Positions 12-26,083 of a stretch of 64,000 nt of DNA are shown piece by piece. Origin of the DNA: Monocercomonoides exilis PA203. Taxonomy: Eukaryota > Protista > Preaxostyla. Below the pieces are notes generated by a model that was given only the letters and a program-made list of their open reading frames with translations, searched no databases and was not told the origin of the DNA. The position numbers and the translations under genes are program-made. The stretch covers positions 620,001-684,000 of the forward strand of contig LSRY02000035.1 in NCBI GenBank assembly GCA_001643675.2, given 5' to 3'. Position 1 is the first letter of the stretch, and every line of letters starts with the position of its first letter.

Positions 12-3000
12 TTGAAGCCTCATCCAGTGTTTTTTGATTCAACATCTGCACAAAACGAGCTTTCTGACAAACTACAGCCAGTTCGATTTGCAAATCACAC
101 TGCACAAATTAACGGGTTCTGTAGCTGGAAAGCTTCAAATGACGATACTGAAAGTGGAATTGAAATTGAAGAAGAAGAAAGCGTGCAAAATGAAGAAGCT
201 TCCGATAAAGAAGCTAACTCTGAAGCTGACGATTGGAGAAGATCTGCAATGAAAAATCGGAGAAAAACAACTCAACCACGCAGAACAGCAAAGGACCTTA
301 GGCTTTTGAGCTTGTTTAGTCGCGATTCAAAAGCATCTTATTCACTTGTGTTAAACACATCGTCTGCTCATCTTGTTTCAGCATTTCGCTCTCTGTGCTT
401 TGCATCCAACTCTCTCAGTCAAGAAATTCCTCTCTCACTATTTCCTGCTTTGTGGACGCGCCTTTCAGACTCAGAGCAGCAGAGCTGCATCAAAGCGACA
501 ACAACTGCTTTATCAACAAATGTTGCTTCAGAAGTCGTTCCAAGCGATGCATTTGGATGGAAAGTGTCTTCTGCTGGACAGTTGCTAAGAGTTCAGAATC
601 GATGTAGATTGCAGAGTTTCAATAGAGATTTGAGATTAGAAAAGAGTAAACCGTTTGATTTCTATGATGATGACAGCGGCGAGGAAAGCGACGGTTTTGC
701 CAATCATTCGTCAAAAGATTGTAAACACACAGATGAGAAAAATTCATCCACCAGGAATGAAGGAATGATGGAAATTGACACAGGCAACACAAAGGAAACA
801 ACAAAAGAACCGAGAAGAGATCTCAAGAGAAGGAAAAAAGGAAAGCATCTCCGCCGAATGCGCCCAGTGAACGAAGTTACTCGAGTGATTTGGCATTCTC
901 ATCGGCCATCGTCTGCCCTTTCACCGTTCTGGTTCCTTCCTCCGCTTATGCAGAAGCGCAATATGGCAAGACACCCAACAGAACTGATTGGCTCAATGCC
1001 TGCAAACATTATGTTGAACTCAACAACGTTAGGAAGTTTGAGAAGTCGTCGTGTTTTGATGGAGAAAATGCTACAATTGCGAGGTGGATTCCTGACTGAT
1101 GGAAGAGAAAACTACAACAAGAGAAAGGAAGTATTGTGCCGAAAACACGGGACACCTGTTTCTGAGACAGAAATTTCAAAGCTTACAACTTTTGAAGATT
1201 TGATGGAGGATAACTTCAACATTTACTCAAAGCTGTCGCATCCGAATGTTGAAGAACATTATCAAAGGAAGCAAAAGAACGGAACTTCGAAGCCATTTGA
1301 GGCTGTGTCTCCATTTTCAACTTCATTGAGCGTTTCGAAGTCGCAGCATTCAAACGAGAAAAAACTTAACAATGAATTGCCAACTGTTTTAATGGAAAAT
1401 GATGAAGATTCTGAATTGAATACAAATAACTGTCAGATAGTTCAACAGAACGAAAGCAAAGATTCATTGAAATTGCAAGACCAAAATCTCAATGGATACG
1501 AGAAAGAAGATTTGAGCTGGATGAACAAGTTTTATCCTTATTCATTAGGATCTATCAATGATAATTGGCAGAAAGGGAGAGAAATTGCACGTTCAATCTT
1601 CAGAATTGGAGTGGGGAGAAGAGGAGAATCAGACGTTTCTTGGATGAAGCTTAGAATGAACGATACTACCAAAGAGACAACAAACTCTGGTGCAAATAAC
1701 ATTACAACAGAGCAAACAGGAAGCAAAGATGCTTTACCGAAGTCAATTGGATTAGACTCGATTTTGAATCAAGTAATTTTCGATACTGAGTCACTGTCAA
1801 TTCGCGAGAAGTTGTTGAGTGACATTGAAAAAGAAGTTTTCGGAGATGAGTCACATTCAGCATCAGCAGAACAATCACGTTCTTCGACTAATGTAAATCA
1901 TATGCTAATTCGCTTAGATGAAAAAACTCGTCGTCGTCGATTGCAGTTGTACCATCGTTTGACAGACAAGTATCTCTTCAACACAGCAGCGCTGATGATC
2001 CCGCCTGCAATAATTGTCCATTCTGCAATGCATTATGGAGCATGGGAGCTTGGTGTTTCGTTCCTGACGTTTTCGATTGCTGAAATCGCTGATATCATTC
2101 GCCGGTCACGAAAATACGGAAATGTCAGAGCAAATTACCAGAAATTGTTTACTCCGCATACAAATTACGAGCTGTTACCAGTTACAATGAATGGAATGGA
2201 GCTTACAGTTGAAGAAATTGGAAATACGATTCATAGAGATATGTATGATGAGGATTTGTATGTTTTGCAAAGTGAGATGGAAAGAAGAGCTAAGCTGAGA
2301 AAGAAAATGAAGGATGATAAAAGCAAGCAGCATTCTTCGTCTTCGTCTTCAGCATCTGCATCTTTATCTTCTTCGGCATCTGCTTCTTCTTCAATGAATA
2401 CTTTTGGTAAGAGAAAGCAGGAAGAGAAAGACGAAGAATGGCTGAACAACGAGTCAGATCCTGATGATGATGAGATTTGGGGGCCAGACGCAAGGAAGCA
2501 TTGCTTGCGCTGTGCAACAGATGAATTGGATGATGAGTTGATGTGGGAAAGCGAGATGGATGATCTGTCTGAAGATTCCCTGGAAAGCGATGAAATCTCC
2601 GACAGCGAAAAGCAATCTGTTTCAACTGACGAATGGGATCTCAGCGAATTTACTGATTCAAGCAATGACAATGATGGAGGTGAAGATAAAGAAAATGAAA
2701 AGAATGCTCTTCTAAATTCAAAATTAATTGAAGGTGAAAGTCAACAAAAAGATCAGATCAAATTACAACCAGCTGGAATTTCTCAGATAAAGAAAGAAGA
2801 TCAATCTTTCAATCTGCCGAATTCTCAAGCAATAAAGCCAGATCCAGAAGGAGAAAGCTTGCCAGCAAAGATGAATGCCTTGAAAATACATTCAAATGAT
2901 GAAACAACTCAATCTTCGCAAACATCTTCAGACGCTACATCTTCAAGCGAACAGCATAATTTGCAACTGAACAGAAACTCAAGCGTTGCTGGAGGATTGA

Positions 3001-6000
3001 AAGGTGGAGCTGATCCGTCTAGTTCAGATTCGCATCGTGTGCCATATCCAAACCAGAACCCGAATTTCAACAGGAGCCATCGTGGCCCAATTCCCAGTGG
3101 AATGGAAAGGATGGGGCAAGATGGAATCAGAGGAGCAGAGCATCAGAGAAGGGAGCATGGGATGCTGCAGCAGAGAAGCGAATTGGAGCAAAGAATGCAG
3201 ATGAAAGAGGAGGTGGGCATCAGCCACGATCCGAATCTTCAACCATCACCGAATGTGGAGTATCTTTTAATCAACCCACCTTCGCAAATAGCGCCATATC
3301 ATGCCGATTTAGCAAAGCTTCCATTGACCAGACAATCGATGCTGTTTCCAAATTCAACACAGATTCTTGATGTTCAATTCCCAGCGAACAGGGCTGCTTT
3401 CGAAGCTTATGAAATGCATTTCAGCAATCCTTCGCCATTCAGTATATCTGGAGCTGTTTTAAACGATGTTATTGATTCAGCAAGCTTTCTTTATGAAGCT
3501 GTGGATGAGTTCTCTCTTGCAGCACAGCTGTGGAAGCAGAGAAGTCCAACTGTATTGATCTCTCGTATTTACTCGCTGATGCTTTCAGATTTCTTCAGAG
3601 CTTCTGTGAAGGATATCTCTGCATACATAAAGACGCATGTTCCAAAAGAGTTTTCATTTGATCGTTTTGATACCGTGACAAAGAATCCAACAGAACTGCC
3701 CAGAATTCTGTTTCCGGAGTTGGATGATAAAGGCCAGTTGATCGAGCAGCGTGTGATTGGGCAGAATGAGTTTAAAGAAGATGAAGAAACCAAAGAAAAA
3801 GAAGATTTGATATTCATTCTGATGAAAGAGCTGAGGCGTCAGCTTTCAAAACTGGAACAAAGCAATCAATACGAAGCAAGTTCAAATGCATCAATTGCGA
3901 AAAAGAAAGATATTCCAACACTTGAGGAGGAGATTGGCTTCTGCCTTCGAAATGAGAATTTCCATATAAGCAAACTTCAACAGCTCATTTCAGAATACTG
4001 CACTGTGGATGTGGATAACAAAGAGCAATTTGCAGACAAAAAGGTTCCAACTATTCTGAAGAATCCACCATCAATGGCATCTGGCGATGTTTATGTAGCT
4101 GCGCTGCGCCTGATCGATCCGAATTTTATTCCTGGTGCCGCTAGCAGTTCAGAGTTAAAGATGATTCACACAGTATTCATTCATTGTGTTCATTGTATTA
4201 ATGAAAATAAGATGATCAAAGAGAGTCTGCTTCCAATTGCCTGCAGCAATAAAGACGCAAAAATAATTGACACAGTGATTTCTGCATCACTCAAATTAGG
4301 AAAGAAGGAATATTTCGACACAAAGAACCGTATGCTTCTTTCAGGTGTTGATAAGTCACATTTTGAAGGAGAGCTGTCACTAATTGACAACACTCTGTTG
4401 CGATTGTACGAGTTGTCTGCAGATCCAACTGAAGCGAATCTAAAGAGGACAATTGCATCGATTGAAGCAGATGCAAAGAAAACGAGAGAAGGACTGATGC
4501 GCATCTTGGCGCTTCATTCAAGTCGATTCACGAATTGCCACAGAAAACAGACATATCTTTTGTCGCAGCTGAATGATGTTGAACTTTTCTTAGAGGCCGT
4601 TCAAGACGCACACGAGGATTTTCAGAAGGAAGCGAAGTCAACTAAAGATGTTCTTATAGTTGAGCCTTCCACATGCAGCAGTGCATCTAGCTCTTCTTCT
4701 TCTGTTGCATCTTCACCAGTACCTTGGACACTTGATTTAGCCAAAAGGAGCTCTATTTCATCTTCCAAAAAAATTTTCCACGATCGCTTTGCTTATAGAC
4801 TTGCCAATCAGTTTCTTAGAAGATTCCCTCCAAATACCAGTGTTCCATTTGTTGTAGTTGATACCACGAGTTTTCGAATACATGTTTTGAATGCTCTATC
4901 TCCAATAACTGCAAGCAAGCAAGCTAAAGAACACATATTTTCTGCGCTCACCTATCAGACATCAGAGGTTATGAGGAGGCAGCTGAGATACAACGACTCA
5001 TTATCTGCAGGAAGCATTCTTTCAATTGCTGACAGCACCGATTTAACTTCAGAGACAAATAAATCTGATGGAGAGAAAGATAAAATCTTGGAGGAAAGAA
5101 ATCAAAGAAATCAAATCATCAAAAGAATTTCATCAAAAAGAAGAGGGAATGAAATACAAGAAGCATATCGTGTTCCTCTGAATGAATTGGAAAATGTTGT
5201 AAGAACTGGACAAATCAAAGTGGGCGAAAAATCTATCAACATTTCGTCTGCTTTAATATTTGCAAAGCGCGAAATGTCTAAACTTGATTTGAAAGAAAAA
5301 ACTTATCTGAGCTTATTGTTGGATTATGTGCGTTGCGATAAAATGAGCAGACAACTGAATCGTGGAACTTTGGGCTCTTTGATGCAGCTTTTGTTTGAAA
5401 GAAGATCAAAAAGAATGAACTGCGAAAATGCGACAAGTGAAATGAGTGCACTGTCTCTTCTGAAATTATTGAGCTTTATGCGTTTGGAATGTTTGAAAAA
5501 GAAAAGATCGAAAAATTGGTTGAAGAAAATGCTATCCATGATTGAAAAAGAAGCTCAAAGATCAATAAAAGCATCGCTGCATTCAGGAAAGAGAGATACA
5601 AGTAAATTGTACAAACCTTCACAATCTCAATTCAATGGACAAGATGTATCAATATTGAATCAGGAAATGCTGAACAAAGGCAACCAGAATTTCGAGCAAT
5701 CAAGCTCCTCAAGTTTCACACAATATAATGGATCAAAAGGAATGAAATCAACTCAACCAGCTGAAGTTCCATCCACGCCAAACACGCAACCAGCAACTCA
5801 ATATCAGTCTGTGCCTATTGATGATGATGACGACGATGACCCGTTTGCTGGATTGGACGATGAAGATGAAAAAGAAGAGAAAGTTGTGTATTCAACTTCT
5901 TCAGAACGTTCAAAATCCAAAAAGCAGAAATCAAAAGCTTCATCTTCTGATATTTATTCCAATTCAAATGAAATTCTTGATGACGACAGCAGCGACTTCT

Positions 6001-9000
6001 TGGGAGATGACGATGTTTTAAGCGCAACTCCTCCAAAGCAGTTGTCACCGTCAAGCAGATCAACATCAAGATCGCAGCGTGCAAGTTCTCCTTCAAGTTC
6101 ATATGGCAGCGCATCTGCTAAGCCAAAGGGAAAAGCAAAGGCTCGAGGAAGAGGAAAGCCGAAATCAAAAGCAACTCCAATTCCAGTTCCATTAATTGAA
6201 CATGCACCGAATGCGAAGAACAACCAGTTTTCTTCAAGTTCTGAAACAGCTTCAACAGTCAGCTCGATTTCTCCAGCGTTTCCTGCGGCACTCTCAAAAA
6301 CAGTGTCATTTCCAGCAATTTCAGGCTATAAATCAATCTCACCATCTTTTGCTGCTTCAAGAACAAATTCAGCTTCAACATTCCAATCATCAGGATTTCC
6401 TGCGAAGCCAAACATGCCATCAACTCAGTCATCTCTGCAATCAGATTCACTGATGTCTCAGAGCAGCTCCTCTCAGACTGGCGGATTGATTTATTCTGCC
6501 TCAAAATTGTCTCAAATTTCCATGCAAAACAATCGGTTACACAAAGGTTGCCACTCATTGTGTAAATCTGCTTTATCTGTTTCTGAAGATGTATTTTCAA
6601 GATCAGCAGCCTCCAATAAACTTATATCAAAATTCCAGAATCAACAACTTCCATCACCAGAGCTTCTATATTCACTTTGTCAGAATAGCAAATCTTCTCC
6701 TGCAAAAGCAGTTGATCGATCGAAGACAGGAAATATACCACCGCTTCCACCTTTGTCAAGTCTTCGATTGCCTTCAAATATTGTACATTCAAACAATGTT
6801 TTGTGTCACGACATTTCAACTGTATCTACCAGCGTGATGCAACCAGAGTTTTCTAATGAAGGGCAGATTAATTCATCGGCTTCAAATCAAACATCAAAAG
6901 AAATGAATACAAATAACTTCGTGAATGAACGCAAAGAACTTTCAAAACGAAAGAGTTCTCCATACAGAATCAGAGTTGTGAAACGTCCATTTTTAGCACA
7001 AAAAGGCAGATTTCTTAATGCATCAAAGATTTTATTAGCACACAATCAAAAACAGCTTATCTCAATGTTCGTTACAAATTATATGAATGAAACAGAAAAA
7101 GATGACCAAAATTCTGGACATGAGAAAGGATTAGCTTTGGACCACTCTCAAATGATAGCAGGCGAGGAATACTCTAACTCATTAACTGCAACGTCTGAAT
7201 TTATCGATAAGACCTATTCTTCTGTGTGCAAAAATGCATATTCTTCAAAAATGGATGTTGATAAGTTCAAAGAAGGTGACACAAGCTTGTGCAACAAGCG
7301 AAGACAAAGAATATCACTACTCATTGCTTTAGATACAGTAAAGAAAAGAAATTCTAAATACGATGAAAAAACATATTCAAATGAAATGATTCGTTTTGCT
7401 CAAGGAGATCTCTTCATTTCCTCTTCGTTCAAAGAAGGAGCCGATCTGTTACAGGATCGAAGCTGGCTTGGCAACGAGATGAGGGCTTGGATCAACGAGC
7501 GATTTGGCCATGTGGAAGCAGCAAAGGAGTTGCTGCTCCGTGCTGTTGAACAGAATCCTACGAACTTCCATGCGTGGGAAGACATCGGGTTGTTTGCAGA
7601 GGAGCAAAAGAAAAATGTTACACATGAAATACAACGTAACATAAACGAGTTAGCGCAAATATCAACAGAAAATTGTATTTTCAGTCTGTTTAATGAAAGT
7701 CACAATTTCTGTGAATCAATTTCTCTATCATTCTACTTTGCAATTTTGCTCAAGCCTCAAAGAGCTGTTAATCTTATGTCTCGCTTTGTGATCAACACTT
7801 TTGAATACCTTTTAGTTAGGAGCTGGAAAGAAAAACAAAAGAACAATTCAACAGACAACCTAAAATCTGTTGAGCACAATGAGGCAAAAATTGTACGAAA
7901 ATCAAAGTCTCATTTTGAGAAGTTAATGTCAAACTATAAACTTCCAGTGTGGGTGGCCATTCCGCACACATATTTCTTTTTATCGCAACTTGGCTCACCT
8001 TCCGGCTTTGTTTTCAAAGATGCATTGCTCAATGCAACTCATTATTGTCCTTCACAACTCTACTTGCCTGTTCGAGCTGCATTGGAATGCGTGAAAAGCA
8101 TTCGGCTTATCTCAAATCCAGATCAACACTCACAAGAATATCAACATTTAACAAAAATTTTGAATTCTATTTCAACTACACATTCTGAAACGGCGGTTGT
8201 ATTGGAGAGACTGGCAAAGGCGTTGTGTTCTGTTCATCTTCAAAAAGAGCATCTTGTGCTGAATAGCATTGATGTTCTTACGTTCATTTGGTCTGGCGCA
8301 TTGGCTGCGTGCGACGCTGTGAAAGATCGAGAAGGGAAAGTTGAACATGTTAATCTGGAACTACTCAAGGATTCGAAGATTCAAATGGATATGGAATCAT
8401 CATCATCTAATTCCGACCATTCAACAATTAAGATATTATGTGTAACGAAGTTTTATGAGCAATTGAGAATTTTGAGAGAATACATTTTCATTAACCGTGA
8501 ATCTTTGCCTCCACTTTTCGTTGTCTTTGCATGTGGTCTATTTTCATTATTCCCAGAAGCTCCTCTTCTATCTCCATGTGCATCAATAATTGCTGCTCTG
8601 CGTTATTTGTACTCATGGCGTGATGTTTTGTACGAACTTTGTCCTCTTTCAGCAACTCTCAGTGAATCATGTGCAGAATTAGCAGCACTTAATCCAGTGT
8701 TCTCTTCTATTCCTCTCGAAGTGCCAGGCGTATGCGCATACTTGTCATCTTCCACTGCTCCACCACGCAGTAGATTAATCTCATACTTTGATGCTGTTGA
8801 AGCAGCATCTCGCAACATTCAATCAGAAGTTATTAAAAATGTTGCAACAGTGGTATCGTTTAAACATCGCTCATCACCATACAATTTATATGTTGATTTG
8901 AATAGCATGATTGAAAAAGATAATATTTCTGAAAGCAAAGTCAAAATGGAAGCGGATGAGATTTCACCTTCAGTTGAAATCAATAAATCATTGATAATTC

Positions 9001-11387: not shown

Positions 11388-14300
11388 ATGCGAAAATCTA
11401 TTCCTCCCAATGCTACAATTCCTTCAAATTTTCTTGACGTGTATTTAACATGCCCAATATGCTTGAATATACTAGTTTGAAATGACTTTATTTCATATTC
11501 TTATTGCTATTCTATATGATTAAAATATTCACTTTTTCAAGGATAAACCTGTTGCTCTGAGGGCGTGCATGTTTGCAGACAATTGAATTTGTTTCTTTAA
11601 TAATTTATCTGAAATATTATTTTTCAGGCATCGTTTTTGCGAATCTTGTGTCAAAACATCAACACAGCAAAGCCGAATAGGGTATGAAAAAAAAAAATAG
11701 AACAAATAAATTAGCCATCCATTTTATTGCTTTTGCTGCATACATTTGTGCTGATATTAAATAGAAAGAAGAGATGCCCCTCATGCCGCGCTATTGTGAC
11801 ATCAACTAGAGATATGCATCGTGACTATGGACTTGAGGCTTTAATTCGTCAAATGCATCCAGATCTAATGACATATAGAGCAACATATTGCCGCATGCCA
11901 AGCTGTATGCTTGTTTTCTTTTTGAATTTTCGATTAATTCTTGTGTTTTCAATACTTAATAAAAGTAATAAAAACAGTACGATTGATAATTATTGAATAG
12001 TTTTAAATCATTCAATCATTCCCTTATATTTTAACTTTATTAAAAAACTTCTTTTTCAGAGGAGTATAACTCAAAGCGGAGGTTCTTCCCTAATTCAAGC
12101 AAAGTCCAAAAAATCAAGTTCAACAAATTTAGCTACTCAAAAGGAACGATTGGAAAAACTAAAGAAATTTTCAAAATTTCTCGATGCAGATTTGTTTGAA
12201 ACGCTGAATCAATCTTTGAAGACGATGGGAGCAAACGAAGAGTCGAAACTTTCTCATGAACACCAACTGGAAGGGATGATAGGAGGTATGGAGATCACAA
12301 CACCTGAAGAAGAAACAAAAAATGATAGTGACAGTAGCGATGCGCAGGATGTGGTGATGGTGGGAGATAGCATAAGCGGCTACAGTGGAGAGATGTTCAA
12401 GAACACAAAAGATTTTCCAATGAAGAAAGGGAAAATGAATCCAATGAAAACAAAAGGCAAAAGCAGCAAAAGTGAAGAGGCCACTTCTCCAGATATTTTC
12501 AATGGTCTGCTCTCAATTATACAAAAGACCTTTATTTTTTGTCTTGTTTTTGATTTTTGATCGTTAATCAATTTTTCATTGTGAATGACAATTTCAAAAT
12601 TTTCAATTAAAATGCAAACAGCTTGGGCACGAACTGTTAAAACGAAAGGTTCAAACAAAAAAACTAGTTTGGTGACAAAACCCATCAAATCCAAAAAGGG
12701 AAGAAAGCCAAAAATAGCGAGCTTGTTAAATACGAAGAAAACAGATCAAAGCGAAAATCAATTGTCATCTTCTGATAGTTCATTACCAACATTATCGAGG
12801 GCATCTTCGTTGCATTCGACCATCAAAAAAAGGAAAAATTCAGACGAAGGAGAGAAAAAAGCGAAGAATCAGAATCAAGCTTTGAACGAAGCGGAAGAGA
12901 AAGAGAAAAAGGAAGAAGACGATTTCTTGACGCAGATAGATTTTTGGTTCAGTCAGTCCCAGCCTTCACTCACCACAGGACTTTCAAGCTTCGATGAGAA
13001 AAAAACCGATGAAAATGCGTTTGGAACTCGGACATTAAGCAAAGTTTCATCGTTCAGTCGACCTAGTCGGCAGGGGACTGTTCGTGACACGCTATTTGAC
13101 GAGTCGTTTGAGAGAGATTTGAATGATGTGATGGGCAACCTGTCTTTTGGGCCAACGCAGTCGCTGAGCATGCATTTGAGTGGAATCGGATTGGATGAAG
13201 ACAAAAGAAAAGACGAGGAAAGAGGCATTCTTAAAAAAGGAAGTACAATTGTGTTGCCACAGACGAATTATGAGGAAAAGAAGGAGAGTTCAGCTCATTT
13301 AACAGCAGACCTCAATAAAGATATTAAGAGCACTCAGGAAGAAGAAAGAAAGAAACATTTAAGCAGAAGTGAATCTGATGGTAAAAAGACTGAAAGAGAA
13401 AAGATATCAGCTGCAAAAGAAAACGCATCAAAGATAATTTCAAATGAAAAAGTTGGTGAAGATTCAAAAGAACTTGATTCTTCAAATACAAGCGCAAAAT
13501 CCTCTTCTGCCCCAAGCGAAGAGAAAGGCTTGCAGGATATGTTGAGCCAGCTCTCTGAAGAAGACGAGAAGCGCAAAAGACTATCGAGCTCAGTCACTCG
13601 AGCTCGTTCATCGTTGAACACCAATCAGACTCCAACGAAGACAGACAGACCTCTCAACGAACAAGCAGCATCGCCAAAGTCTCCAAATGAGCTCAGCTTT
13701 TTCAGCCGCTCCCGCTCGCTGGCGTCAAAAGTGACTTCTCTTTCTCCTTCTCTGCACAAATCTGTTTCTTATGCATCGATTTTTTCACCAATGCATTCTC
13801 CAAACTTTGAAGCATCGCCTCGTGCCTCGCCAGTGATCTCTCCGATGTTTCCTCCTCCGCTGCCCTTAAAGCACTCACGCTCTCTTACCATTCTGTCGTC
13901 CTGCTTGCCAAACTCACCTGTTTCTGTGAAGCTAACATTCAAAAAGCCTGTTGACGATGAAGCAGACAATGTTTCGTTTGCCTCTCCTTCACCATCCTCA
14001 CCAAGCACAGGAGACAAACAAAAGCGCTTTTCTCTTAAAAAGGGAGCTGCACATACAACCACGCCAGCACTTACTCCACAGCACTCCCCTGTAGTTAGTC
14101 CAACTCGTTCTCCTTATTTATCAAAAGAGGTGCCAATTTCTCCATCTCTGCTTCCTGCTTTGGCTTCTCCTCAGCAGCAACGCAAGCCAACTGTTGCAGC
14201 ATCAACAGAATCAGCTGGCTCTTCTCCAAATGAAATTGCCTCTCCTTTGCCTGCTGAGATAAATAGAAATGGGCAGCAAGTCCTTGAAGTGGAGCTTATT

Positions 14301-16223
14301 CACAAGAAGTCTCCCCACAAAGCTGATGAATTGCAGGAAGTCGCTTCGTCGTCTGTCGACTTGCCCTTTCCGTGTGCTGTTCCTCTGTCAACGCGCTCTT
14401 CTTTGGGTGCGCCGCCAGCGCAGACATATTCAGTTGATGATCCAACTTTTTGGAAGGTTGAAGTGGCTTCGGAAAGCGGAAAAGTAGAAGAGGCAGTTAA
14501 TCTCCTTTCTGTTTGCTCATCTCATTTGACGAAGATGCACACTATCAAAATTGGGCAGAAAAATGTTAGAAAAGATGGAAATGAGGAAGAGGAAGAGGAA
14601 GAAGAGGATCATGTTGATGTTCCAAGGAAAGAGAAACAAGCTAATAGAAGCATCAATATCTCGGAAGCTGTTGAACCTGCATTTGACAAAGCAGAAATAA
14701 ATATGAATACTCATTCAAACACGAGTGAAGAAAAAGATGAAAGTGGAGACAAAGAGAATGTGACAAGTGAAAACGTCAAAACAGAAGAGGATAAAATGAA
14801 TGGTGGAAACCTCAAAGATAAAATGGAAAAGATGAAAAATGAAAAAAATCCGAACGAAAAAATGACAATTTGTCAATCAAATCAAATTCAACAGACTTTG
14901 CAAAAGACAAAAGCAGATTATGAAATTCATGCAACAAAAGGCTCATTTGATGCGTCCTCGGAGCATTCTTCACTTTCTTCACAATCAGTTCGTACAAGCA
15001 AAAATAATACCGGTAAACACATCACATCATCAAAGACGGAGCATGCAAGCAACATGAAACTTTCATCGGATGATGTGAAATATTCCCCTCAGAAAGTTGA
15101 AGGTCAAATTTCTGATAATTCATCTCACCAATCTCCACACGACTCTTCGATTTCTTCTTCTTCTTCTTCTTCTTCTTCTTCTTCTTCTTCTTCTTCTGTC
15201 ACTCCCCCTTCTTATTCAATGCCAAGCGCAACCACTTCACTTTGTCTGCTGTCATTCATTTCAAATTTTATGGATTATTATTTCCCTCTTTCTCAGACTA
15301 CTCGGAGCATCGGCTCAATTGCCTTCAGCCGCAGCGATGTGGCTAGCCGCGAAGATGCGCATGGAACAAAAGAAGGTCACAGCAAACATGCAAAACAAGA
15401 AAGACATCAACCAGAAGAATTGGATGGAGCAGATGAAAAAGGCAGTAAAATGACAAGCTCCAACGACGATGAAGAAAGCAAAAGAGATGGATCTTATTCC
15501 CCTACTCGGAGGAAGCTTACCACATTCTATTTGAAGAGAGATCAGGAAGACCACGATTTGTACAGCCAGACTTCAGAATTTGACCTATCACAAGTTCATT
15601 CAACCACTTCTTTTAGCAACTATTCAGCTTCTTCTGCTTCTTCTGCTTCTGTCTCATCTTCTTCCTCCTCTTTAAATCCGAATTATTCATCACCAGCTTC
15701 TCGTCCATCGCAGCCCTCTGGCCAAACTCCATTCACTTCGCGCACTTCGCCAGAGCCCAATCTGTTTTCTCAGCAATTTCCTCCTCTCTGCTCATCGGCT
15801 GATCCATTCTTGTCGTTTATCCTTATGCGCAACCCAAGAGACATTCAAATGTCTCATTTTGCTCCAATTCCGATGTGTGCCCCTTCTTCAGCCTCGCTCT
15901 CACAATTGACACCTTTGATCCAGTCACGTATAAACCAAGCACATGCACAATCCAAATCAGAAGCGAAGATGTTTGGAAAGAAAAGCGAACAGAAAACGAA
16001 GTCAAATAAAGACAGCAGTAATTTGTTGAATTCTTCTTCATCGGATTTTTATTCAACCGCACCTATGTCTTCTACGTTCGCATTTTCTTTGAAATCCAAT
16101 GATGGAGTTCTTCATAAGCTCAATTCTTCATTTCCTATTGGAGTAATATTTGCTTTGTATGGACCGAAAAAATCCTTCAGAACAAAGGAATCTGCATTAA
16201 AAATATTAGTCGGAATAAAATAA
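11388..16223 (+). CDS. RING1/RNF2-like C3HC4 E3 ubiquitin ligase, multi-exon, with a long Ser-rich low-complexity C-terminal exon
   Basis: Spliced exons 11388-11474, 11542-11570, 11628-11681 and 11765-~11904 (GT-AG) give TCPICLNIL-DKPVALRACMHRFCESCVKTSTQQSRIG-KKRCPSCRAIVTSTRDMHRDYGLEALIRQMHPD. This matches the RING1 pattern CPICL..L..T....C.HRFC..CI...LR.G.K.CP.CR....S.R.LR.D....ALI...YP. Joining to exons ~12060-12503 and ~12622-16223 is inferred; one junction phase was not resolved. Confidence 0.7.
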
Positions 16224-18620: not shown

Positions 18621-19501
18621 ATTATAAATTTTAAGTTTTTTGCTTTTTTAAAATATAAATCAAAAACGAAAAAAAAATTCAATTTTTTATGATTTATCGA
18701 TAATTGAAATTTCGATAACTTTAAATGAATTGAAAATTGAACATATTTTCGAATGAATTAAGTTGATTGAAACTAAACACCATTTAATATTCAAATTCGG
18801 TTAACTTCTTATTCAAAAAATATCAAATTGAGTATTTTTTTTAAGAAATTTTTTGTGAAAAATTGGTTTTTTGCTGAGTATCGGAAAATGACAAAAAATA
18901 TTTTATTATTTCATTTCTCACAAAAAGGATGAGTGTTCGAACCTATATTTTTATCGTTTGTGAAAATACACAAAAATTTACTTCTTTTTCAGAAAAAAAC
19001 CATCATCTTTGAAATCAAATAATTTTTGGTGAAAAGAGAATCAACCTTCATTTTTGATCTTGATATAAACTTTTTCAATCAAAAATTAATAATATTAATA
19101 CACATATAAATACATCATATACATGAATTTATTGCATTATTAAACACAAAAAGCAGAACTTTTAAATCCTTTGATCAATGTTGTTTAGAAAAAAAGGTTT
19201 AATAATTTCTTGTTTTTTTTCTTTTCAAGAGCGTGCAGAAAGATAAAGTTGAATCATCGATATGTTTTCAAATGTTAAATGACAATAGTGCTGTTTAGAA
19301 TGGTTTTGAACTCAAATTCTTGATTGTGCCAAAACAAAGTGCAGTTTTTGTGGTTTATTTATGTTTCTTAAAAGAGAATAAATATCATCACTAATTCTTT
19401 GCTGCCTCAATTGGAAAAGAAGAAAATCACTATTTTCCAATATTAAAAATTATCATTCACAATTGAGGATTTTAAATTTTGGATGTGACTGATTTATCTT
19501 T

Positions 19502-19585
19502 TTAATAAAGACGCAGTGAGACAGGTTTGTTCGGAGAAAATGAGTATTGATTTGAAGTTTGGGTGGTTTGAGTGAAAAACTTCAC
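19502..19585 (-). repeat. DIRS right (3') inverted terminal repeat
   Basis: The + strand taataaag..acgca..caggtttg.tc..aatgagtattgatttgaagtttgggtggttt is homologous to the reverse complement of 25465-25556 (taataaag...acgca..caggtttgctcc..aatgagtttgatcttaaacaatgggtggttt). Confidence 0.8.
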
Positions 19586-19796
19586 CCTCTCCAAAATGAC
19601 GTGGAAAAAAGGGCGAGATAAAATACAAAACAATAACATTAAAATTAAGAAATAAATAAATAATGCATTGTCCGCTTCACTTCACCACAGACTTCGCCTT
19701 TTCGCCTTGGTCACGAAGACCAGAGGGCAGGGGACATGCCCCTCGGAGCTCTTTCCTGCAGGCTGTGCAGGGATCCGGTGAGGCGAGTATTCTTGG

Positions 19797-19849
19797 AGCA
19801 GAAAGAAAAACCACTCTCGCTTCCGCGTGGCGTGGAAAAGAAAACTGCT
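19797..19849 (-). ncRNA. ENE-like U-rich internal-loop (triple-helix) RNA motif in the DIRS 3' region
   Basis: The minus strand reads AGCAG-UUUUCUUUU-CCAC-gcca-CGC-GGAA-GCG-aga-GUGG-UUUUUCUUU-CUGCU. This gives a 5-bp lower stem, two opposed 9-nt U-rich strands each with one C, a 4-bp upper stem and a GNRA-capped apex. Confidence 0.6.
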
Positions 19850-20156
19850 TGTGCAGCGCTCTGGCTCCCGCTTCTCTGTTGCATCAGCAGAGCAACCTCA
19901 ATCATTACCCACTGTTTGGACTGCTCTGAATCTTCTGTGTTAAACACAATCGTTATCGTGTTAAGGAGAAAGCTTTGATTAAAACTGTTTATTCATTCCC
20001 TGTTTCTCAATACAGGTTAAAGGTGCACCAAATCTTTCTGGACGGTTACTCGTTTCTTCTCTCTTCTGCTGTCTCGCCTTTTTTCTTGTCATCTCCCCAC
20101 ACACTTCTGGCTCCCACTCGCACCACTCAGCCTATCGTCTCTCCATCGGCATTCCT

Positions 20157-20253
20157 ATTATCTCGGAGCAAACCTGTCTCACTGCGTATTTATTAATTCG
20201 TTATGGAGCGAATCTACGAACGCAAGGAGTAGGTTTGCTCCTCAATAATGAGT
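20157..20253 (-). repeat. DIRS internal complementary region (ICR), two abutting halves
   Basis: 20157-20196 is an inverted copy of 19502-19541 (36/40 nt). 20207-20253 is an inverted copy of 25503-25549 (44/47 nt). The + strand reads as the predicted circle junction ...gcgtatttattaa|ttcgttatggagcgaatc... Confidence 0.88.
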
Positions 20254-20675
20254 CTCGAAATCCTTTCTTTCTCAGTGCACGTGATCCAAAACCCCTTTTC
20301 TAGCACGCTCTAGTGCGGCGGATGAGTTGAGAGCGTGCGAATAACGATGCAGCACTCCTGCTCTCCATCCCACCTCTCTTGGGATATTTTTGTGGCGACA
20401 CCGGTCTGGCCCCTGCATTTTCCGTGTCATTCCCTATCTGTCCAAAACTTCTTCCGCTACGCTTCTTCCGATCTTTGCCTCTCTTCTTCAGTGGAGTTGT
20501 GTTCTTCCCTCCAGTCAGCTCACAGATATTGTTGGGGATTATGGAGGGTGTTTTCCGAAGCAAGGGTGGTCTGGATGAGGAGTTCTGTGACAAAATTATT
20601 TCTCTTTGTATTCTCTCTTCTCAAAGCTTAAAGTCTCGTTTCTTTGGCCGCTTTCTCCTTCCTCATATCTTATTC

Positions 20676-22070
20676 TCACCCAGTTTCTGATGTCTTTTCA
20701 GTGCAATCTTTCATCTCTGAATTTGCTTTCTCGAGCCTCCTATCCTTCGATTCTCCACTCTTATCTGGCTTGTTATCTTCTCCCATCTGAGGTACTTGTC
20801 TCCCTATTGTCTCCAGGATCCATTTTATGTCTTGTACCGGTAACATGGTGTAATATTCCTGGGCCACTCTCGAACCCTGCGCCCATCTCGCGTACGCATT
20901 GATCGCCTTCCAGTCCGCTCCTTCTTGTCTTGCTAAGTATGTAATCACTGCTTGTCTTATAGATTTGGCGGTAAATGTGTCTGGTATTCCGTTTTCTCTC
21001 AGGACAGCCACTAATTCTTCTTTAATTCTCTGCAAGTTTGCAGGCTTGCTCCCTTCTATGTCAAACCACACATGTTCGTCTTTAAAAGTTGTCTTTGTAT
21101 AGTACATCCAGCGTTGAAGCGCTTCCACTGCATCAATTCGTGGATTCGGATGTTTGTTTATAATAATTTTGATAACCTTATTTCCAGACATCTTGGTTCG
21201 AACTTGTGTCTGGACCGAATTGTCTTTAAATATCGTTGTATAACTTCTCATTCTCTCCAGCTCTGCTGGTCTAAAAGCACCGAAAATCATGGTTAGGATG
21301 AGGGCTCTCCTCTGGAGGATTTGTGGGTCCGTCATATCGTGGGCGGCTTCTGCCCATTTGGTGATTATCGTGAAATCCCACATCGTCTTGTACCGTTTGC
21401 CCTTTCTCTGCTTATCTCCCACATAAGTGTTTTGAATTATTTCTATGTCCTTTCGATCAATCTTGGATTCCCTAAAAAGGTTAATGGAATCCAGTTCTTT
21501 TCGTACTGTCTGATGAATTACTCCACTCGAGATGTTCGTATTCGAGAGTGTTTCGGTGAACTCTGCCATAATCCATTTGGCATCTTTGGTTGTGAGGGGG
21601 TCAGTGTCATCCATGCTCTCTCTTTCCAAGAATTATTTAAATCTTCGCAGCGATCTCCACGTGTCTCTTTCGCTCTTTTGATTTATAAGTATTGCTGCTG
21701 ATATATCTTTTGCTCCAACGTATTCTCCACATGTGAGGAAGAGGTCCCTTCCTGGGATATTTTCCTCTCCAGTATAACGCTTATTACCTCTCCTGGGGGT
21801 AGTTTCCAGCCTTCCCTTCTCATCTTCGCTCCCGGAATCATGCACTCCTGAAAGGTCCCCAGGGTCTTTATGGAATGCCCAGGCTGCAGCAGCGGGGTCC
21901 AGGTCTGCCCCCGCCAGGCCGGCAGAATCAGAATTGTTAGTTCCATCAAAGCTTCCTTCATCTTCTCTTTCAGGGTCCGTCCAATGTTTCTCAGGAACGG
22001 GTGGACTAGCACTATGTCGTCTTCTGGTGTTTCTCTCTCTCTCCTCCTTCTCACGGAGGATAGTCTCCAA
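20676..22070 (-). pseudogene. DIRS tyrosine recombinase ORF; catalytic domain 20676-21629 is open, and the upstream extension overlapping pol is cut by an in-frame stop at ~21633
   Basis: YR motifs: GAFRPAEL (R), RTKM (K), AKSIRQA (HxxR box with H replaced by K), YARWAQGS (W), QEYY (Y). ORF 21633-22070 is in the same frame. Confidence 0.85.
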
Positions 22071-23771
22071 GTTCTTCCGCAGGGCACCGGCGCAATCTGT
22101 TCTAAAATTGTATCTGGTATTCTCGGTGCGATTGTTTACTATATCCCTGCGACTTTCTCCCCACTCAGGACTTGTCCAGCTTTTTCACCATCCGGCTGAG
22201 TGCATTTGCTTCTGTATTCTGTTCCCCCGGGAGATGTTCCGTCTGAATTGTGATGTCCAGGCCGTTCAGTTTCCTTTCCAAAGCCCTCAGTGTTTGAATG
22301 AGCTACGGCGCTCCCCTCTTCTTCTGAATTGTCCATCTCGCGGACACGTTATCTGTTTTTAGACGAATAAATCTTCCTTCAGTTGTTGCAGCCATGCTCC
22401 CTTTCTCTCTAGAGTCCTCAACACTGCTCTGGAATCCTTCTCGTTGATTGCAAGCGTGCTCTCCTGGAGAGTCCAACTTCCGTGAACATAAATCTTCTCC
22501 TCCCTGTTCTCTTTCGGTATTGTCAACGCTGCACCCCATCCCAGCTCTAACGCATCCGTTGTAAGTACTGCTGGCCTTGTTCTCTTCCTCATACGCCTCG
22601 GTTTATTCTCTTGTTGTATCTTTTTCCAGTGTGTTAATTCTCCAGGTTTCATTGGGCTGACTATCACCGTTCCATTCCAGCCTCCGCGGGCTATTGCATG
22701 CCTCAGCACATATTGCATGCGCTTCATCCACAAGCTCGCCGGTGGGTGTTGTGACCTCACAAAATTCAATCTCCCGAGGAGTGCTGCTAAGTCTCTCGTC
22801 TTTTGTCTCCTCCTCTCCATTGCATGTGCTTTCCACGTTCGCACATCCTCCAGAAGCAGCACTCTCTTCCTCTTTTGGAGCGTCACTTCCATCTTCTCTG
22901 AGTTCCACAGCCATCCCAGAAACTCCACGCTCCTTACTGGTTCAAACTTCAGTTTCTCTTCCGACAGTATCCAGCCCAGATCTCTCAGGAACTGGGCTAT
23001 CTCCTGTGAGATCGATCTCAATGCATCCCTGTCTGGGTGCATGAGGAGAATGTCGTCCAGGTATATCACTTGCTTCACTTTCCACTTTTCTCTGATATAT
23101 GACGCCTCCCTTCTCATTATCTTCGTGAAAACTCTGGAAGCATTTTTCGCTCCAAATGGCATCCCTATGTGAGCGTAGCATTGACTTTGAAAGCTGAAAC
23201 ACAGATAGGGACTGAATTACTCGTACACTTTGACATGCTGGTATGCACTCGATATGTCCAGAGTTGTCATCCAGTCGTTCTCCTCCAGGAGTTCCACCAC
23301 TGTCTCCTGGGAATCCATCTTGAAATGCTTTCCCTGTTCTTCCTCGTTTAGAGCTCTGCAATCCAGGATTTTTCTCCACTTTCCGTTTTTCTTTATCACC
23401 ATGAATGTCGGGTTGAACTACTTCACCTCCGACTCCTGTATGGGCTTCACCACTCCATCCATCAACTCCTCCTCCAAGAGGGATAAATAATTGTTCATCA
23501 TCTCCATCGTCCCCCGAAACTCTTGTCTATGTTTTCTCTCCTCGAGTGAGATTGGGGATTGGGGACTTTTTCATCGAGCTCTTATACCACGGCTCACAAG
23601 TTTATCTCCCCCAATCTTCTTCCACTCGCTCAGTCTGTTCACTAGTCTCCCAGGAAGTAGCTCCTTCGGTGGTCCAATCGCTTGACTCCTCTTCACTTCT
23701 TGGGTCTTGTGGCCATGCTGAATCTGTGTATTCTCTTCTCCTTCGAGAATATATGCAATAGCTGTCTTCAA
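21683..23771 (-). pseudogene. DIRS pol (RT, RNase H, methyltransferase-like domain), broken by stops and frameshifts
   Basis: RT: KKNGKWRKILDCRALN, LDISSAYQH, MPFGAKNASRVF, IYLDDILL. RNase H: LTTDALELGWGA, TDN. MT-like: VHPFLRNI...ILPAWRGQTW. The motifs are split over ORFs 23571-23771, 23217-23402, 22359-23162, 22303-22539 and 21683-22087. Confidence 0.9.
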
Positions 23772-25464: not shown

Positions 25465-25560
25465 CGAAGTTTGATTTTAAACCACCCATTGTTTAAGATC
25501 AAACTCATTATTGAGGAGCAAACCTGCTTCTTGCGTTCGAAGATTCGCTTTATTACAAAT
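25465..25560 (-). repeat. DIRS left (5') inverted terminal repeat
   Basis: The sense strand starts ATTTGTAATAAAGCGAATC. It is complementary to the ICR half at 20197-20253 and homologous (inverted) to 19502-19585. Confidence 0.82.
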
Positions 25561-26083
25561 CGATGAATTATTCCTTTTTCTGGTTTTCATTCCTCAAATC
25601 TTCTTCTTTCATCAAATGATGCAACAAACTCAGCAAAGAAAAAATTGTTATAAAATATTCGAATTCTTGACTAAGCCTGGGTGACTTAAGACTTTTGTCT
25701 TAAGGAAATCTTCTTTTGACTGACTTTAAAAATGCTTGAAGTCAAAAAGCATTTATATCTAATCAAAATTATTCAAAAGTTTAACAGTTTATCGTTCACA
25801 CACTTAATAAAATAAAAGGAAAATGAAAAATTTAAATCGAACAAAAAATAATCGATACTTTTTTTTTTGAAATAAAGAACACGTTAATGGGTTTTGACTG
25901 GATCAATTTTTTGGAAATTGCCTAAGTCACAGACTGGTCGATCTTTTTTTGACTTTGTCAAATTTTTGTGTCAACACCCAACATAATTGAATGTTAAAAT
26001 CATTTGAGTGAATTTCAAAATGCCTTTATGGATAAACATATTAATTGCATCGTTTTTTGATTGATTTATTCACTTTGAATAGC

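What the first reader, a model, noticed from the sequence alone, without database searches (positions are those of the whole stretch)
19797..19849. ENE-like triple-helix motif in the 3' non-coding region of a DIRS retrotransposon
Seen: the sense strand reads AGCAG-UUUUCUUUU-CCAC...CGC(GGAA)GCG...GUGG-UUUUUCUUU-CUGCU, a symmetric U-rich internal loop between two stems with a GNRA apex, ~300 nt from the element's 3' end. Established: ENEs (KSHV PAN, MALAT1, plant and fungal TE RNAs) have this form and clamp poly(A) or an A-rich tract in U-A-U triples to stabilise intronless RNAs. The C in each strand would suit a C+-G-C triple with an AAAAGAAAA-type tract. No such tract lies downstream, so the ligand would be the poly(A) tail or the upstream AAGAAAAAA (~20079-20087). 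Inference: a 3'-end protection module that could also sequester or position the RNA 3' end for the poorly understood DIRS priming step. I know of no description of this combination, but I could not search the literature.
Basis: partly seen in the sequence, partly recalled or inferred. Interest (0 to 1): 0.8.

Follow-up and report, generated by a model that had tools for sequence, protein, structure and literature searches.

The report
ENE-like U-rich hairpin in DIRS retrotransposon
A jumping gene of the DIRS type in the gut protist Monocercomonoides exilis keeps, almost unchanged in more than 60 copies, a small RNA hairpin shaped like the 'ENE' elements that grip an RNA's poly(A) tail, but what its two U-rich strands really bind has not been shown.

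Summary
On the minus strand, window 19849->19797 reads AGCAG-U4CU4-CCAC-[apical hairpin]-GUGG-U5CU3-CUGCU. It lies in the 3' non-coding region of a DIRS-type element (RT, RNase H, tyrosine recombinase, ICR), 295 nt from the element's end. The genome is Monocercomonoides exilis.

The hairpin is under selection. It is the most conserved 51-nt stretch of the 3' region in 63 distinct copies. The U-tracts match the consensus at 98.8%, the linkers beside them at 64%. Its 33 outer bases recur exactly 72 times in the genome. A strict ENE descriptor found nothing else in 718 kb, nor in 5 Mb of simulated sequence.

The ENE interpretation remains unproven:
- No poly(A) site was seen, and no matching A-tract lies downstream.
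- No compensatory pair changes were found in the 63 aligned copies, and no Rfam family matched.
- Five related oxymonad DIRS loci (four with a readable post-ICR region) lack the hairpin.

One new point is that a conserved purine island (ARAAGAR) about 90 nt upstream matches the tracts, with its G opposite the tract C.

This scan already noted the same motif on another piece of this genome (s1-468352). My estimates are poly(A) clamp about 0.33 and any triple helix about 0.45.

The parts
19797..19849 (-). ENE-like hairpin core: lower stem, U4CU4, upper stem, apical hairpin, U5CU3, lower stem
   Evidence: Sequence read, local minimum-energy fold. It is the most conserved 51-column window of the 3' region in 63 copies. 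Its outer 33 nt recur exactly 72 times in the genome.
19836..19844 (-). 5' U-rich strand, UUUUCUUUU
   Evidence: Each column is 97-100% conserved, including the C.
19802..19810 (-). 3' U-rich strand, UUUUUCUUU
   Evidence: Each column is 97-100% conserved, including the C.
19815..19831 (-). Apical hairpin. The consensus is CUCGC-GAAA-GCGAG. The window copy has an A.A mismatch and a GGAA loop.
   Evidence: The stem is paired in 57-62 of 63 copies. The loop varies among GAAA, GGAA, AUAA and AUGA. One copy carries a C-G to U-A double change at the closing pair.
19859..19867 (-). 5' strand of the basal stem. The consensus is GAGGCAGAG. The window copy has a G-to-C change at 19864.
   Evidence: RNAalifold on 30 copies. 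Pairs are kept in 60-63 of 63 copies.
19780..19787 (-). 3' strand of the basal stem, CUCGCCUC
   Evidence: Column 484 is C in 37 copies and U in 22, so the pair is G-C or G-U wobble.
19850..19858 (-). Variable 5' linker between the basal stem and the hairpin
   Evidence: Conservation is only 0.41-0.97 (mean of both linkers 0.64), right beside columns at 0.97-1.0.
19788..19796 (-). Variable 3' linker, with 3-4 nt indels among copies
   Evidence: The indels are not multiples of three, so the region is non-coding.
19661..19880 (-). Conserved non-coding block of about 220 nt that contains the hairpin
   Evidence: Conservation profile, 0.90-0.97 per 20-nt bin.
19930..19936 (-). Purine island B. The consensus is ARAAGAR. 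The window copy reads AGAAGAU.
   Evidence: It is a conservation island (0.95-0.97) inside DNA that is 0.4-0.7 conserved. It is complementary to the 5' U-tract, with its G opposite the tract C.
20137..20150 (-). Purine island A. The consensus is GCGGAUGGAGAGAC.
   Evidence: Conserved island. It can pair in 13 of 14 positions, 4 of them G.U, with the 3' tract plus CUGC. Its 5' half also pairs with a conserved UCAUCCGC just upstream of the ICR.
20071..20087 (-).
   Evidence: Forms a long-range helix with 19603-19619, with 90% of cells paired in 63 copies. Also reported as inverted repeat I8 in the intact copy L074.
19603..19619 (-). Downstream partner AUCUCGCCCUUUUUUCC of that A-rich tract
20157..20253 (-). 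Internal complementary region (ICR)
   Evidence: Inverted repeats with both termini. The match is 100% in the intact copy L074.
19502..19541 (-). 3' terminal repeat R, at the end of the element
   Evidence: Similarity among copies stops near 19500.
25503..25568 (-). 5' terminal repeat L, at the start of the element
20676..21629 (-). Tyrosine recombinase ORF
   Evidence: Pfam Phage_integrase, E = 1.8e-8. There are 127 matches in the genome.
22359..23162 (-). RT/RNase H ORF fragment; this copy is decayed
   Evidence: Pfam RVT_1, E = 1.2e-12, plus weaker RT_RNaseH matches (E = 1e-4, below Pfam's cut-off). The ORFs of the window copy are fragmented.

Best explanation
The hairpin is a cis-acting RNA element of the sense transcript of the M. 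exilis DIRS family, kept by purifying selection, and it is built like an ENE. The single most likely mechanism is as follows. The two U-rich strands of the internal loop clamp an A-rich strand, most probably the transcript's poly(A) tail. One strand would bind it by Watson-Crick pairs and the other by Hoogsteen pairs, giving U.A-U triples. The closing G-C pairs and the stems would frame the triplex. The central C on each strand would split the triplex into two short stacks of 3-4 triples. The clamp would shield the 3' end of this intronless RNA from deadenylation and decay.

Shown: the architecture, the selection, and the sense-strand RNA signature.

Inferred: any triple helix, the identity of the ligand, and the effect on stability.
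For: - ENE architecture with G-C closing pairs: G423-C467 in 62 of 63 copies and C433-G457 in 61 of 63.
- The formally unpaired U-tracts are the most conserved nucleotides of the whole 3' region. Their conservation is 0.988 and their pairwise identity 0.976, against 0.794 for the region and 0.559 for the adjacent linkers. Loop bases this conserved must make specific contacts.
- The core is the top-ranked 51-column window of the region, above the essential ICR.
- The 33 outer nt recur exactly 72 times in the genome; the reversed-pattern control gave 0.
- A strict descriptor gave no hits outside the family in 718 kb, and none in 5 Mb of simulated sequence.
- At G-C pairs the common variants are C-to-U, which keeps a G.U wobble on the sense strand only (57 cells, at frequencies up to 22 copies). 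G-to-A variants number 20 cells, all at low frequency. This points to an RNA structure on the sense strand.
- U residues that would face G in the rival duplex model never change to C, so U identity itself is required.
- The region is non-coding and is present in RNA-library contigs.
- ENEs are established in transposon RNAs of plants and fungi, and G-C pairs next to the U loop are essential for them (PMC12501189; PMC13541005).
Against: - No poly(A) site or tail was observed. Contigs from four RNA libraries read through the hairpin and 24-36 nt past the element's end.
- The hairpin lies about 300 nt or more from any 3' end.
- Both tracts carry an invariant C, which would mismatch a pure poly(A) ligand.
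- No downstream A-tract with a G exists.
- There are no compensatory double changes in the 63 aligned copies. One copy seen only in the genome pattern scan carries a C-G to U-A change.
- No Rfam family matches.
- RNAalifold and RNAfold on the full 3' region pair the tracts with upstream purine islands instead.
- Five related DIRS loci from other oxymonads or metagenomes lack the hairpin. In two of them the contig ends soon after the ICR, so only part of the region could be read.
Confidence: 0.33

Rival explanations
1. Ordinary long-range secondary structure. The U-tracts are not an open loop. Each pairs by Watson-Crick and G.U pairs with a conserved purine island upstream, island A with the 3' tract plus CUGC and island B with the 5' tract. 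Together with the apical hairpin this makes a three-way junction inside a large closed 3' domain. That domain would serve as a recognition or packaging signal for the element's RT or Gag.
For: - RNAalifold on 63 copies predicts exactly this.
- Helix A is paired in 97% of cells and helix B in 93%.
- The minimum-energy and centroid folds of the intact copy's 771-nt 3' region also pair island A with the 3' tract, at z = -9.5.
- Both islands are conservation islands inside variable DNA.
- The domain is closed by the 39-bp R'/R helix and by a 15-bp A6GGGCGAGAU/AUCUCGCCCU6 helix.
Against: - Helix A has 4 G.U pairs and a U.U mismatch.
- U-to-C changes that would strengthen these helices never occur, and the G residues of island A do not drift to A. 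Pairing with each other is therefore not what constrains them.
- The 5' half of island A has a stronger G-C-rich partner, a conserved UCAUCCGC just upstream of the ICR, paired in 40-42 of 42 copies.
- A third helix needed by this fold (columns 353-362 with 415-424) is broken in 15-22 of 63 copies at three positions, without compensation.
- A purine-rich strand pairs trivially with U-tracts. My rough chance estimates are about 0.13 for island B and about 0.04 for island A.
Confidence: 0.22
2. Internal triple helix. The loop clamps the element's own upstream purine island B (ARAAGAR, about 90 nt upstream), not the poly(A) tail. The 5' tract would pair with it by Watson-Crick pairs and the 3' tract would lie in the major groove parallel to it, or the reverse. 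That gives 5-7 layers, including a C+.G-C triple where the two tract C residues face the island's conserved G. This would be a purine-pyrimidine-pyrimidine fold-back triplex that locks the 3' domain, not a 3'-end cap.
For: - Island B is the only cluster of columns at 0.95 or more within about 150 nt of variable sequence.
- Its G336 (0.95) aligns with C428 and C463 in a register where every layer satisfies the loop geometry, that is, a constant sum of column numbers. This is worked out.
- It would explain why both C residues are invariant, which a poly(A) ligand does not.
Against: - Position 333 is G in 52 of 63 copies, which gives a non-canonical layer, so the canonical core is only AAGAA.
- No natural ENE with an upstream ligand is known to me.
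- The complementarity could be chance (about 0.1).
- No covariation is possible because the tracts are invariant.
- Where the tract C became U (L023 and L024), the island G did not change.
Confidence: 0.12
3. Protein-binding or DNA-level site. The hairpin with its U/T tracts is recognised as such. On RNA the reader could be the element's RT or Gag, or a host U-binding protein. On DNA it could be a promoter, a strand-transfer signal or a second-strand priming signal. No triple helix would be involved.
For: - Extreme conservation of loop bases is also typical of protein recognition sites.
- The hairpin lies in a 220-nt conserved block whose other parts are equally unexplained.
- How DIRS reverse transcription is primed is unknown (PMC7192593).
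- Relatives show other pyrimidine-rich features after the ICR. L140 has U16 and U13 inside a stem-closed loop, and the Streblomastix element has a long polypyrimidine run.
Against: - The bias toward wobble-preserving changes favours an RNA structure on the sense strand over a duplex-DNA site.
- No protein or DNA evidence of any kind is available here.
- The sense-strand tracts are pyrimidines, so this is not a classical polypurine tract.
Confidence: 0.25
4. The motif has no function. A chance sequence in the founder element would have been carried along as the family amplified.
For: All copies share descent. There is no covariation and no homologue outside this family.
Against: - Copies differ by about 20% overall and by about 44% in the linkers that touch the hairpin, but by only 2.4% in the tracts. 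Passive inheritance cannot produce that contrast.
- The descriptor is absent from the background sequence.
Confidence: 0.05

Closest known systems
KSHV PAN RNA ENE and the single-domain ENEs of transposon RNAs (Tycowski et al. 2012 and 2016; Evade/Copia93 ENE, PMC12501189)
   Same: A hairpin with a symmetric U-rich internal loop, closed on both sides by G-C pairs. It sits in the 3' non-coding part of an intronless mobile-element RNA. The U-tracts and closing pairs are the best-conserved positions.
   Different: - The tracts are 9 nt with one invariant C each, whereas pure U5 is typical.
- The hairpin lies about 300 nt or more from any possible 3' end.
- Polyadenylation is not shown, and no Rfam or sequence relationship was found.
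- The host is a tyrosine-recombinase (DIRS) retrotransposon of a metamonad. I found no ENE report for either in the literature searches, though the 2016 catalogue itself could not be read.
MALAT1 / MEN-beta ENE+A bipartite triple helix (Brown et al. 2012 and 2014; recalled and cited through PMC6379651 and PMC13541005)
   Same: U-tracts interrupted by a C, which suits a C+.G-C triple that divides the helix into two short stacks.
   Different: MALAT1 has a genomically encoded A-rich tract with a G at the RNA's 3' end. Here no such tract lies downstream. The only conserved matching purine tract (ARAAGAR) lies upstream and is internal.
Double ENEs (dENE) of plant and fungal transposons, such as rice hAT TWIFB1 (PMC13541005)
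   Same: A transposon-borne element able to hold about 8 A residues in two stacks.
   Different: In a dENE a short duplex separates two loops, and there is a conserved adenosine triad and a 3'-end pocket. Here a single loop is split only by a C/C position.
DIRS-1 (Dictyostelium) and DIRS-like elements: ITRs, ICR and unexplained 3' hairpins (PMC7192593, PMC3266345)
   Same: The host element has the defining RT/RNase H/tyrosine recombinase set, and an ICR that equals the reverse complement of the joined termini.
   Different: This family has short ITRs of about 47 nt and an unusually long, highly structured spacer of about 620 nt between the ICR and the 3' terminus. Related oxymonad DIRS elements have spacers of 235-966 nt without this hairpin.

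Membership tests
ENE (element for nuclear expression), a triple-helix RNA stability element | Hairpin with a U-rich internal loop, at least about 5 U on each strand, between two helices | tested here: met
   U4CU4 and U5CU3 lie between a 4-5 bp lower stem and a 4 bp upper stem. This is the local minimum-energy fold and is compatible with 63 copies.
ENE (element for nuclear expression), a triple-helix RNA stability element | G-C pairs immediately flanking the U-rich loop on both sides, which are essential experimentally (PMC12501189) | tested here: met
   G423-C467 is kept in 62 of 63 copies and C433-G457 in 61 of 63.
ENE (element for nuclear expression), a triple-helix RNA stability element | An A-rich ligand in cis: a 3' poly(A) tail, or a downstream genomically encoded A-rich tract | tested here: inconclusive
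   No downstream A-tract that matches the tracts exists. RNA-library contigs show no A tail at or before the element's end, but contigs cannot show minor 3' ends.
ENE (element for nuclear expression), a triple-helix RNA stability element | Position close to the RNA 3' end | tested here: inconclusive
   The hairpin is 295 nt from the element's end. The true RNA 3' end is unknown, and contigs read 24-36 nt beyond the element.
ENE (element for nuclear expression), a triple-helix RNA stability element | Conservation or covariation of stems and U-tracts among homologues | tested here: inconclusive
   Conservation is extreme. There are no compensatory double changes in the 63 aligned copies, only wobble-preserving single changes. 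One copy found in the genome pattern scan has a C-G to U-A change. No homologue exists outside the family.
ENE (element for nuclear expression), a triple-helix RNA stability element | Match to a curated ENE-type covariance model | tested here: not met
   No relevant Rfam 15 hit at E up to 10, on 1.1 kb or on 111 nt. I could not check which ENE families Rfam holds. ENEs are also not one homologous family, so this weighs little.
ENE (element for nuclear expression), a triple-helix RNA stability element | Triple-helix formation and RNA stabilisation | not testable with these tools
   This needs melting, gel-shift, probing or reporter assays.
DIRS-type tyrosine-recombinase retrotransposon (the host element) | RT plus RNase H plus tyrosine recombinase, with no DDE integrase | tested here: met
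   Pfam RVT_1 and Phage_integrase pass their cut-offs. The RNase H-like domain matches only below Pfam's cut-off (E = 1e-4). The intact copy L074 has a Phage_integrase match in its 1452-aa ORF and a separate open RT frame.
DIRS-type tyrosine-recombinase retrotransposon (the host element) | Inverted terminal repeats, and an ICR complementary to both outer termini | tested here: met
   In the window, 25503-25568 pairs with 20188-20253 and 19502-19541 pairs with 20157-20196. In L074 both matches are 100% complementary, and there is a 47-nt ITR.

The most novel reading that the evidence does not exclude
The hairpin would be a new kind of ENE-type clamp whose ligand is internal. Its two U4-5CU3-4 strands would wrap the element's own conserved upstream purine island (ARAAGAR) in a 5-7 layer fold-back triple helix with a central C+.G-C triple. 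This would lock the long 3' domain of a DIRS RNA, possibly switching with a poly(A)-bound or duplex state, and so control access of RT or nucleases. It would be the first triple-helix element in a tyrosine-recombinase retrotransposon and in Metamonada. It would also give a structural handle on the unknown start of DIRS reverse transcription.
Probability: 0.12. Interest if true: 0.85.

Novelty: new variant of a known kind. Interest (0 to 1): 0.55.

Why it matters
ENEs are known from herpesvirus and other viral RNAs, from MALAT1 and MEN-beta, and from transposons of plants and fungi. In those transposons they raise RNA stability and transposition (PMC12501189). A working ENE in a DIRS element of a metamonad would extend this device to a new retrotransposon order and a new eukaryotic supergroup. 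That would suggest either convergent evolution or great age.

How DIRS RNA is stabilised, selected and primed for reverse transcription is unknown (PMC7192593). The most conserved non-coding element of an active family, one that includes intact copies, is an obvious candidate cis-signal and can be tested directly.

If the ligand proves to be the internal purine island and not the poly(A) tail, this would be a new topology for natural RNA triple helices.

Tried and rejected
- Rfam scans of 1.1 kb and of 111 nt found no ENE-like family.
- Covariation gave nothing. RNAalifold and my own pair counts on 30 and on 63 copies found no compensatory changes, because the family is too uniform in the hairpin.
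- More divergent copies within the genome were sought through the recombinase search. All 127 matches belong to this one family. Even copies with 38-51% recombinase identity still align in the 3' region and carry the hairpin.
- A scan of metagenome contigs with the two-tract pattern gave 61 chance hits. None had a lower stem, so there are no homologues.
- Relatives were fetched from the RT word search: Streblomastix strix and five JGI metagenome contigs (plus a Logan contig, L142, that was not analysed). All three checked for repeats (L138-L140) are DIRS-like with ITR and ICR, and none has the hairpin. Two of the contigs are cut soon after the ICR.
- A matching A-tract (AAAGAAAA, AAGAAAAA, AAAAGAAA) was sought in the intact element. 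None lies in the right place.
- The RNA evidence is inconclusive. Only four small metatranscriptome runs, kept as contigs, hold the region. They cover the 3' region but barely touch the ORFs. That may reflect real RNA, or only the higher k-mer depth of sequence conserved among about 100 copies, or DNA carry-over.
- One contig joins the 3' terminus to the 5' terminus. This could be a circle or tandem junction, or an assembly path through the 39-nt R/ICR repeat, which is longer than the k-mer. I draw no conclusion from it.
- A protein-coding explanation for the conserved block is rejected. The ATG of the 101-aa ORF in L074 is not conserved, and the linker has 3-4 nt indels.
- One helix of the global fold, columns 353-362 with 415-424, is rejected.
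- Tycowski et al. 2012 and 2016 are not held in the library. What I say about them is from memory or from papers that cite them.

Full report
**What is there**

On the minus strand, window 19849->19797 reads AGCAG-UUUUCUUUU-CCAC-GCCA-CGC(GGAA)GCG-AGA-GUGG-UUUUUCUUU-CUGCU. RNAfold of the local 67 nt gives this hairpin as both the minimum-energy and the centroid structure. The energy is unremarkable (z = -0.68), as expected when 18 nt sit in an internal loop.

**Host element**

The minus strand from about 25568 to 19502 carries fragments of RT/RNase H and an intact-looking tyrosine recombinase ORF.
- Window 25503-25568 is complementary to 20188-20253, and 19502-19541 is complementary to 20157-20196. 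The segment 20157-20253 is thus an internal complementary region (ICR) equal to the reverse complement of the joined termini, which is the DIRS hallmark.
- Protein names returned by the word search identify the genome as Monocercomonoides exilis.
- The intact copy L074 spans positions 570-6859. Both of its ICR matches are 100% complementary. It has a 47-nt ITR, a 1452-aa ORF with the recombinase domain, and an overlapping RT frame.
- The window copy is an old, decayed one.

**Selection**

The 3' region has at least 40 full-length matches at 79-86% identity, and the recombinase has 127 matches. All belong to one family. Even copies whose recombinase is only 38-51% identical still align through the 3' region.

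I aligned 63 non-identical copies from the ICR to the element's end.

| Part | Mean match to consensus |
|---|---|
| U-tracts | 0.988 |
| Lower and upper stems | 0.968 |
| Apical stem | 0.943 |
| Basal stem | 0.960 |
| Two linkers beside the hairpin | 0.641 |
| Whole region | 0.851 |

Mean pairwise identity is 0.976 in the tracts, 0.926 in the core, 0.794 over the whole region and 0.559 in the linkers. The core is the best 51-column window of the entire region, ahead of the ICR.

The 33 outer bases occur exactly 72 times in the genome, and the reversed-pattern control gave none. Variation is confined to the apical loop, which reads GAAA, GGAA, AUAA or AUGA, so the GNRA apex is not fixed.

**Not a chance motif**
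- A strict descriptor found only family members in 718 kb of M. exilis DNA and nothing in 5 Mb of simulated sequence.
- 61 metagenome sites that carry both tracts never had more than 1 bp of lower stem.

**RNA or DNA, and which strand**

At G-C pairs of the four stems, C-to-U changes keep a G.U wobble only on the sense strand. They account for 57 cells and reach 8, 9 and 22 copies. G-to-A changes account for 20 cells, and all but one are rare. Cells are not independent events. Even so, the variants that spread with active subfamilies are the wobble-preserving ones. This fits a structure read on the sense RNA.

The block is non-coding. The ATG of a 101-aa ORF in L074 is absent from most copies, and the 3' linker has indels of 3-4 nt.

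**Wider architecture**

The hairpin stands on an 8-bp basal stem (consensus GAGGC-GAG with CUC-GCCUC), reached through the two variable linkers. It lies in a conserved block of about 220 nt, window 19880-19661.

The whole 3' region of L074 folds far better than shuffled versions (z = -9.5). It is closed by two long-range helices:
- the 39-bp R'/R helix;
- a 15-nt helix between AAAAAAGGGCGAGAU (window about 20085-20071) and AUCUCGCCCUUUUUU (19619-19605), paired in 90% of cells.

That tract is therefore probably occupied.

**What do the U-tracts bind?**

No AAAGAAAA-type tract lies downstream, or anywhere suitable in the intact element.

Two conserved purine islands lie upstream, inside otherwise variable DNA.

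Island A (GCGGAUGGAGAGAC, window 20150-20137) can pair with the 3' tract plus CUGC in 13 of 14 positions, 4 of them G.U. Island B (A.ARAAGARU, window about 19938-19929) can pair with the 5' tract, with its conserved G opposite the tract C. RNAalifold and the full-length minimum-energy fold prefer this three-way junction.

Several points count against it:
- A third helix it needs is broken in 15-22 copies at three positions.
- The 5' half of island A has a stronger, conserved partner, UCAUCCGC, just upstream of the ICR.
- The U residues facing G never become C, and the G residues of island A do not drift to A. Pairing with each other is therefore not what fixes these bases.

Island B can also be placed in the loop as the purine strand of a 5-7 layer triplex with a central C+.G-C triple, in either orientation and in a geometrically consistent register. 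This is my inference. It would explain the two invariant C residues, which a pure poly(A) ligand does not.

**RNA data**

Only four small metatranscriptome runs hold the region, and they are kept as contigs.
- The contigs cover L074 positions 6435-6895. That span includes the hairpin and 24-36 nt beyond the element's end, with no A tail. The ORFs are almost uncovered.
- Contigs cannot show strand, ends, or even that the source is RNA. Conserved k-mers shared by about 100 copies assemble preferentially. This result therefore neither supports nor refutes polyadenylation.

**Relatives**

An RT word search found DIRS elements of other oxymonads, at 32-40% RT identity over the full query: Streblomastix strix and several JGI metagenome contigs. 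The three checked for repeats (L138-L140) have ITRs and an ICR. None has this hairpin, though two contigs (L143, L144) end soon after the ICR.
- One contig (L140) has U16 and U13 inside a loop closed by a 9-12 bp stem, directly after the ICR.
- The Streblomastix element has a long polypyrimidine run at that place.

Both are suggestive at most.

**Literature**

ENEs in transposon RNAs of plants and fungi are established. The Evade ENE protects against CCR4a deadenylation and raises mobility, and its G-C pairs next to the U loop are essential (PMC12501189; review PMC13541005). No held paper links ENEs with DIRS elements. The 2012 and 2016 Tycowski papers could not be read. The primer for DIRS reverse transcription is unknown (PMC7192593).

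**Earlier work in this scan**

Another agent reported the same motif on another piece of this genome (s1-468352). I reached the same description independently. New here are the purine islands, the occupied upstream A-tract, the comparison with relatives and the RNA-run result.

**Verdict**

The hairpin is real, strongly selected and ENE-shaped. Its function as a poly(A) clamp is plausible but unproven.

| Reading | Estimate |
|---|---|
| Poly(A) clamp | about 0.33 |
| Triplex with any ligand | about 0.45 |
| Ordinary long-range pairing | about 0.22 |
| Protein or DNA-level site | about 0.25 |
| No function | about 0.05 |

If it is an ENE, it is a new variant: long C-interrupted tracts, a new transposon order and a new eukaryotic group.

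Noticed in passing
L140:6533-6620 (JGI metagenome 3300042636, DIRS relative): Directly after the ICR, a 9-12 bp stem closes a 59-nt loop made of U16, an 18-nt spacer with a UCUAUAGA palindrome, and U13. This is a possible analogue of the U-rich loop in a family with 33% RT identity.
   Followed up: partly
L138:7741-7785 (Streblomastix strix contig SNRW01002412.1): A long polypyrimidine run (UUUCUUUUCUUUCUUCUUUCU..CUCUCUUAUUUUC) starts about 20 nt after the ICR of a complete DIRS element. No hairpin is evident.
   Followed up: partly
L074:6139-6157 joined to 6859-6507 in RNA-library contig X4 record 18: One contig joins the element's 3' terminus to sequence identical to its 5' terminus. It could be a circle or tandem junction, or an assembly path through the 39-nt repeat shared by R and the ICR. 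The two cannot be told apart here.
   Followed up: no
L074:1896-2338: Nine tandem copies of a 36-nt unit (95% alike in the middle) lie inside the first part of the 1452-aa ORF of the intact element.
   Followed up: no
L074:1632-5990 and 3073-4638: In the intact copy, the 1452-aa ORF that ends in the recombinase domain overlaps the whole 521-aa RT/RNase H frame in another reading frame. Overlapping ORFs are known in DIRS-1, but the extent here is large.
   Followed up: no
window about 20300-20330 (consensus UCAUCCGC, two copies) and 20144-20150: A conserved UCAUCCGC just upstream of the ICR pairs with GCGGAUG just downstream of it, in 40-42 of 42 copies. This gives a stem that would close off the whole ICR.
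   Followed up: partly
window 19621-19660: A poorly conserved, indel-rich stretch of U and A (about 40 nt) separates the conserved block from the terminal part of the element. RNA-library contigs read through it.
   Followed up: no
window 12585-16223 (+): A 1212-aa ORF with TCT/GAA-type repeats lies upstream of the element. It was not examined.
   Followed up: no
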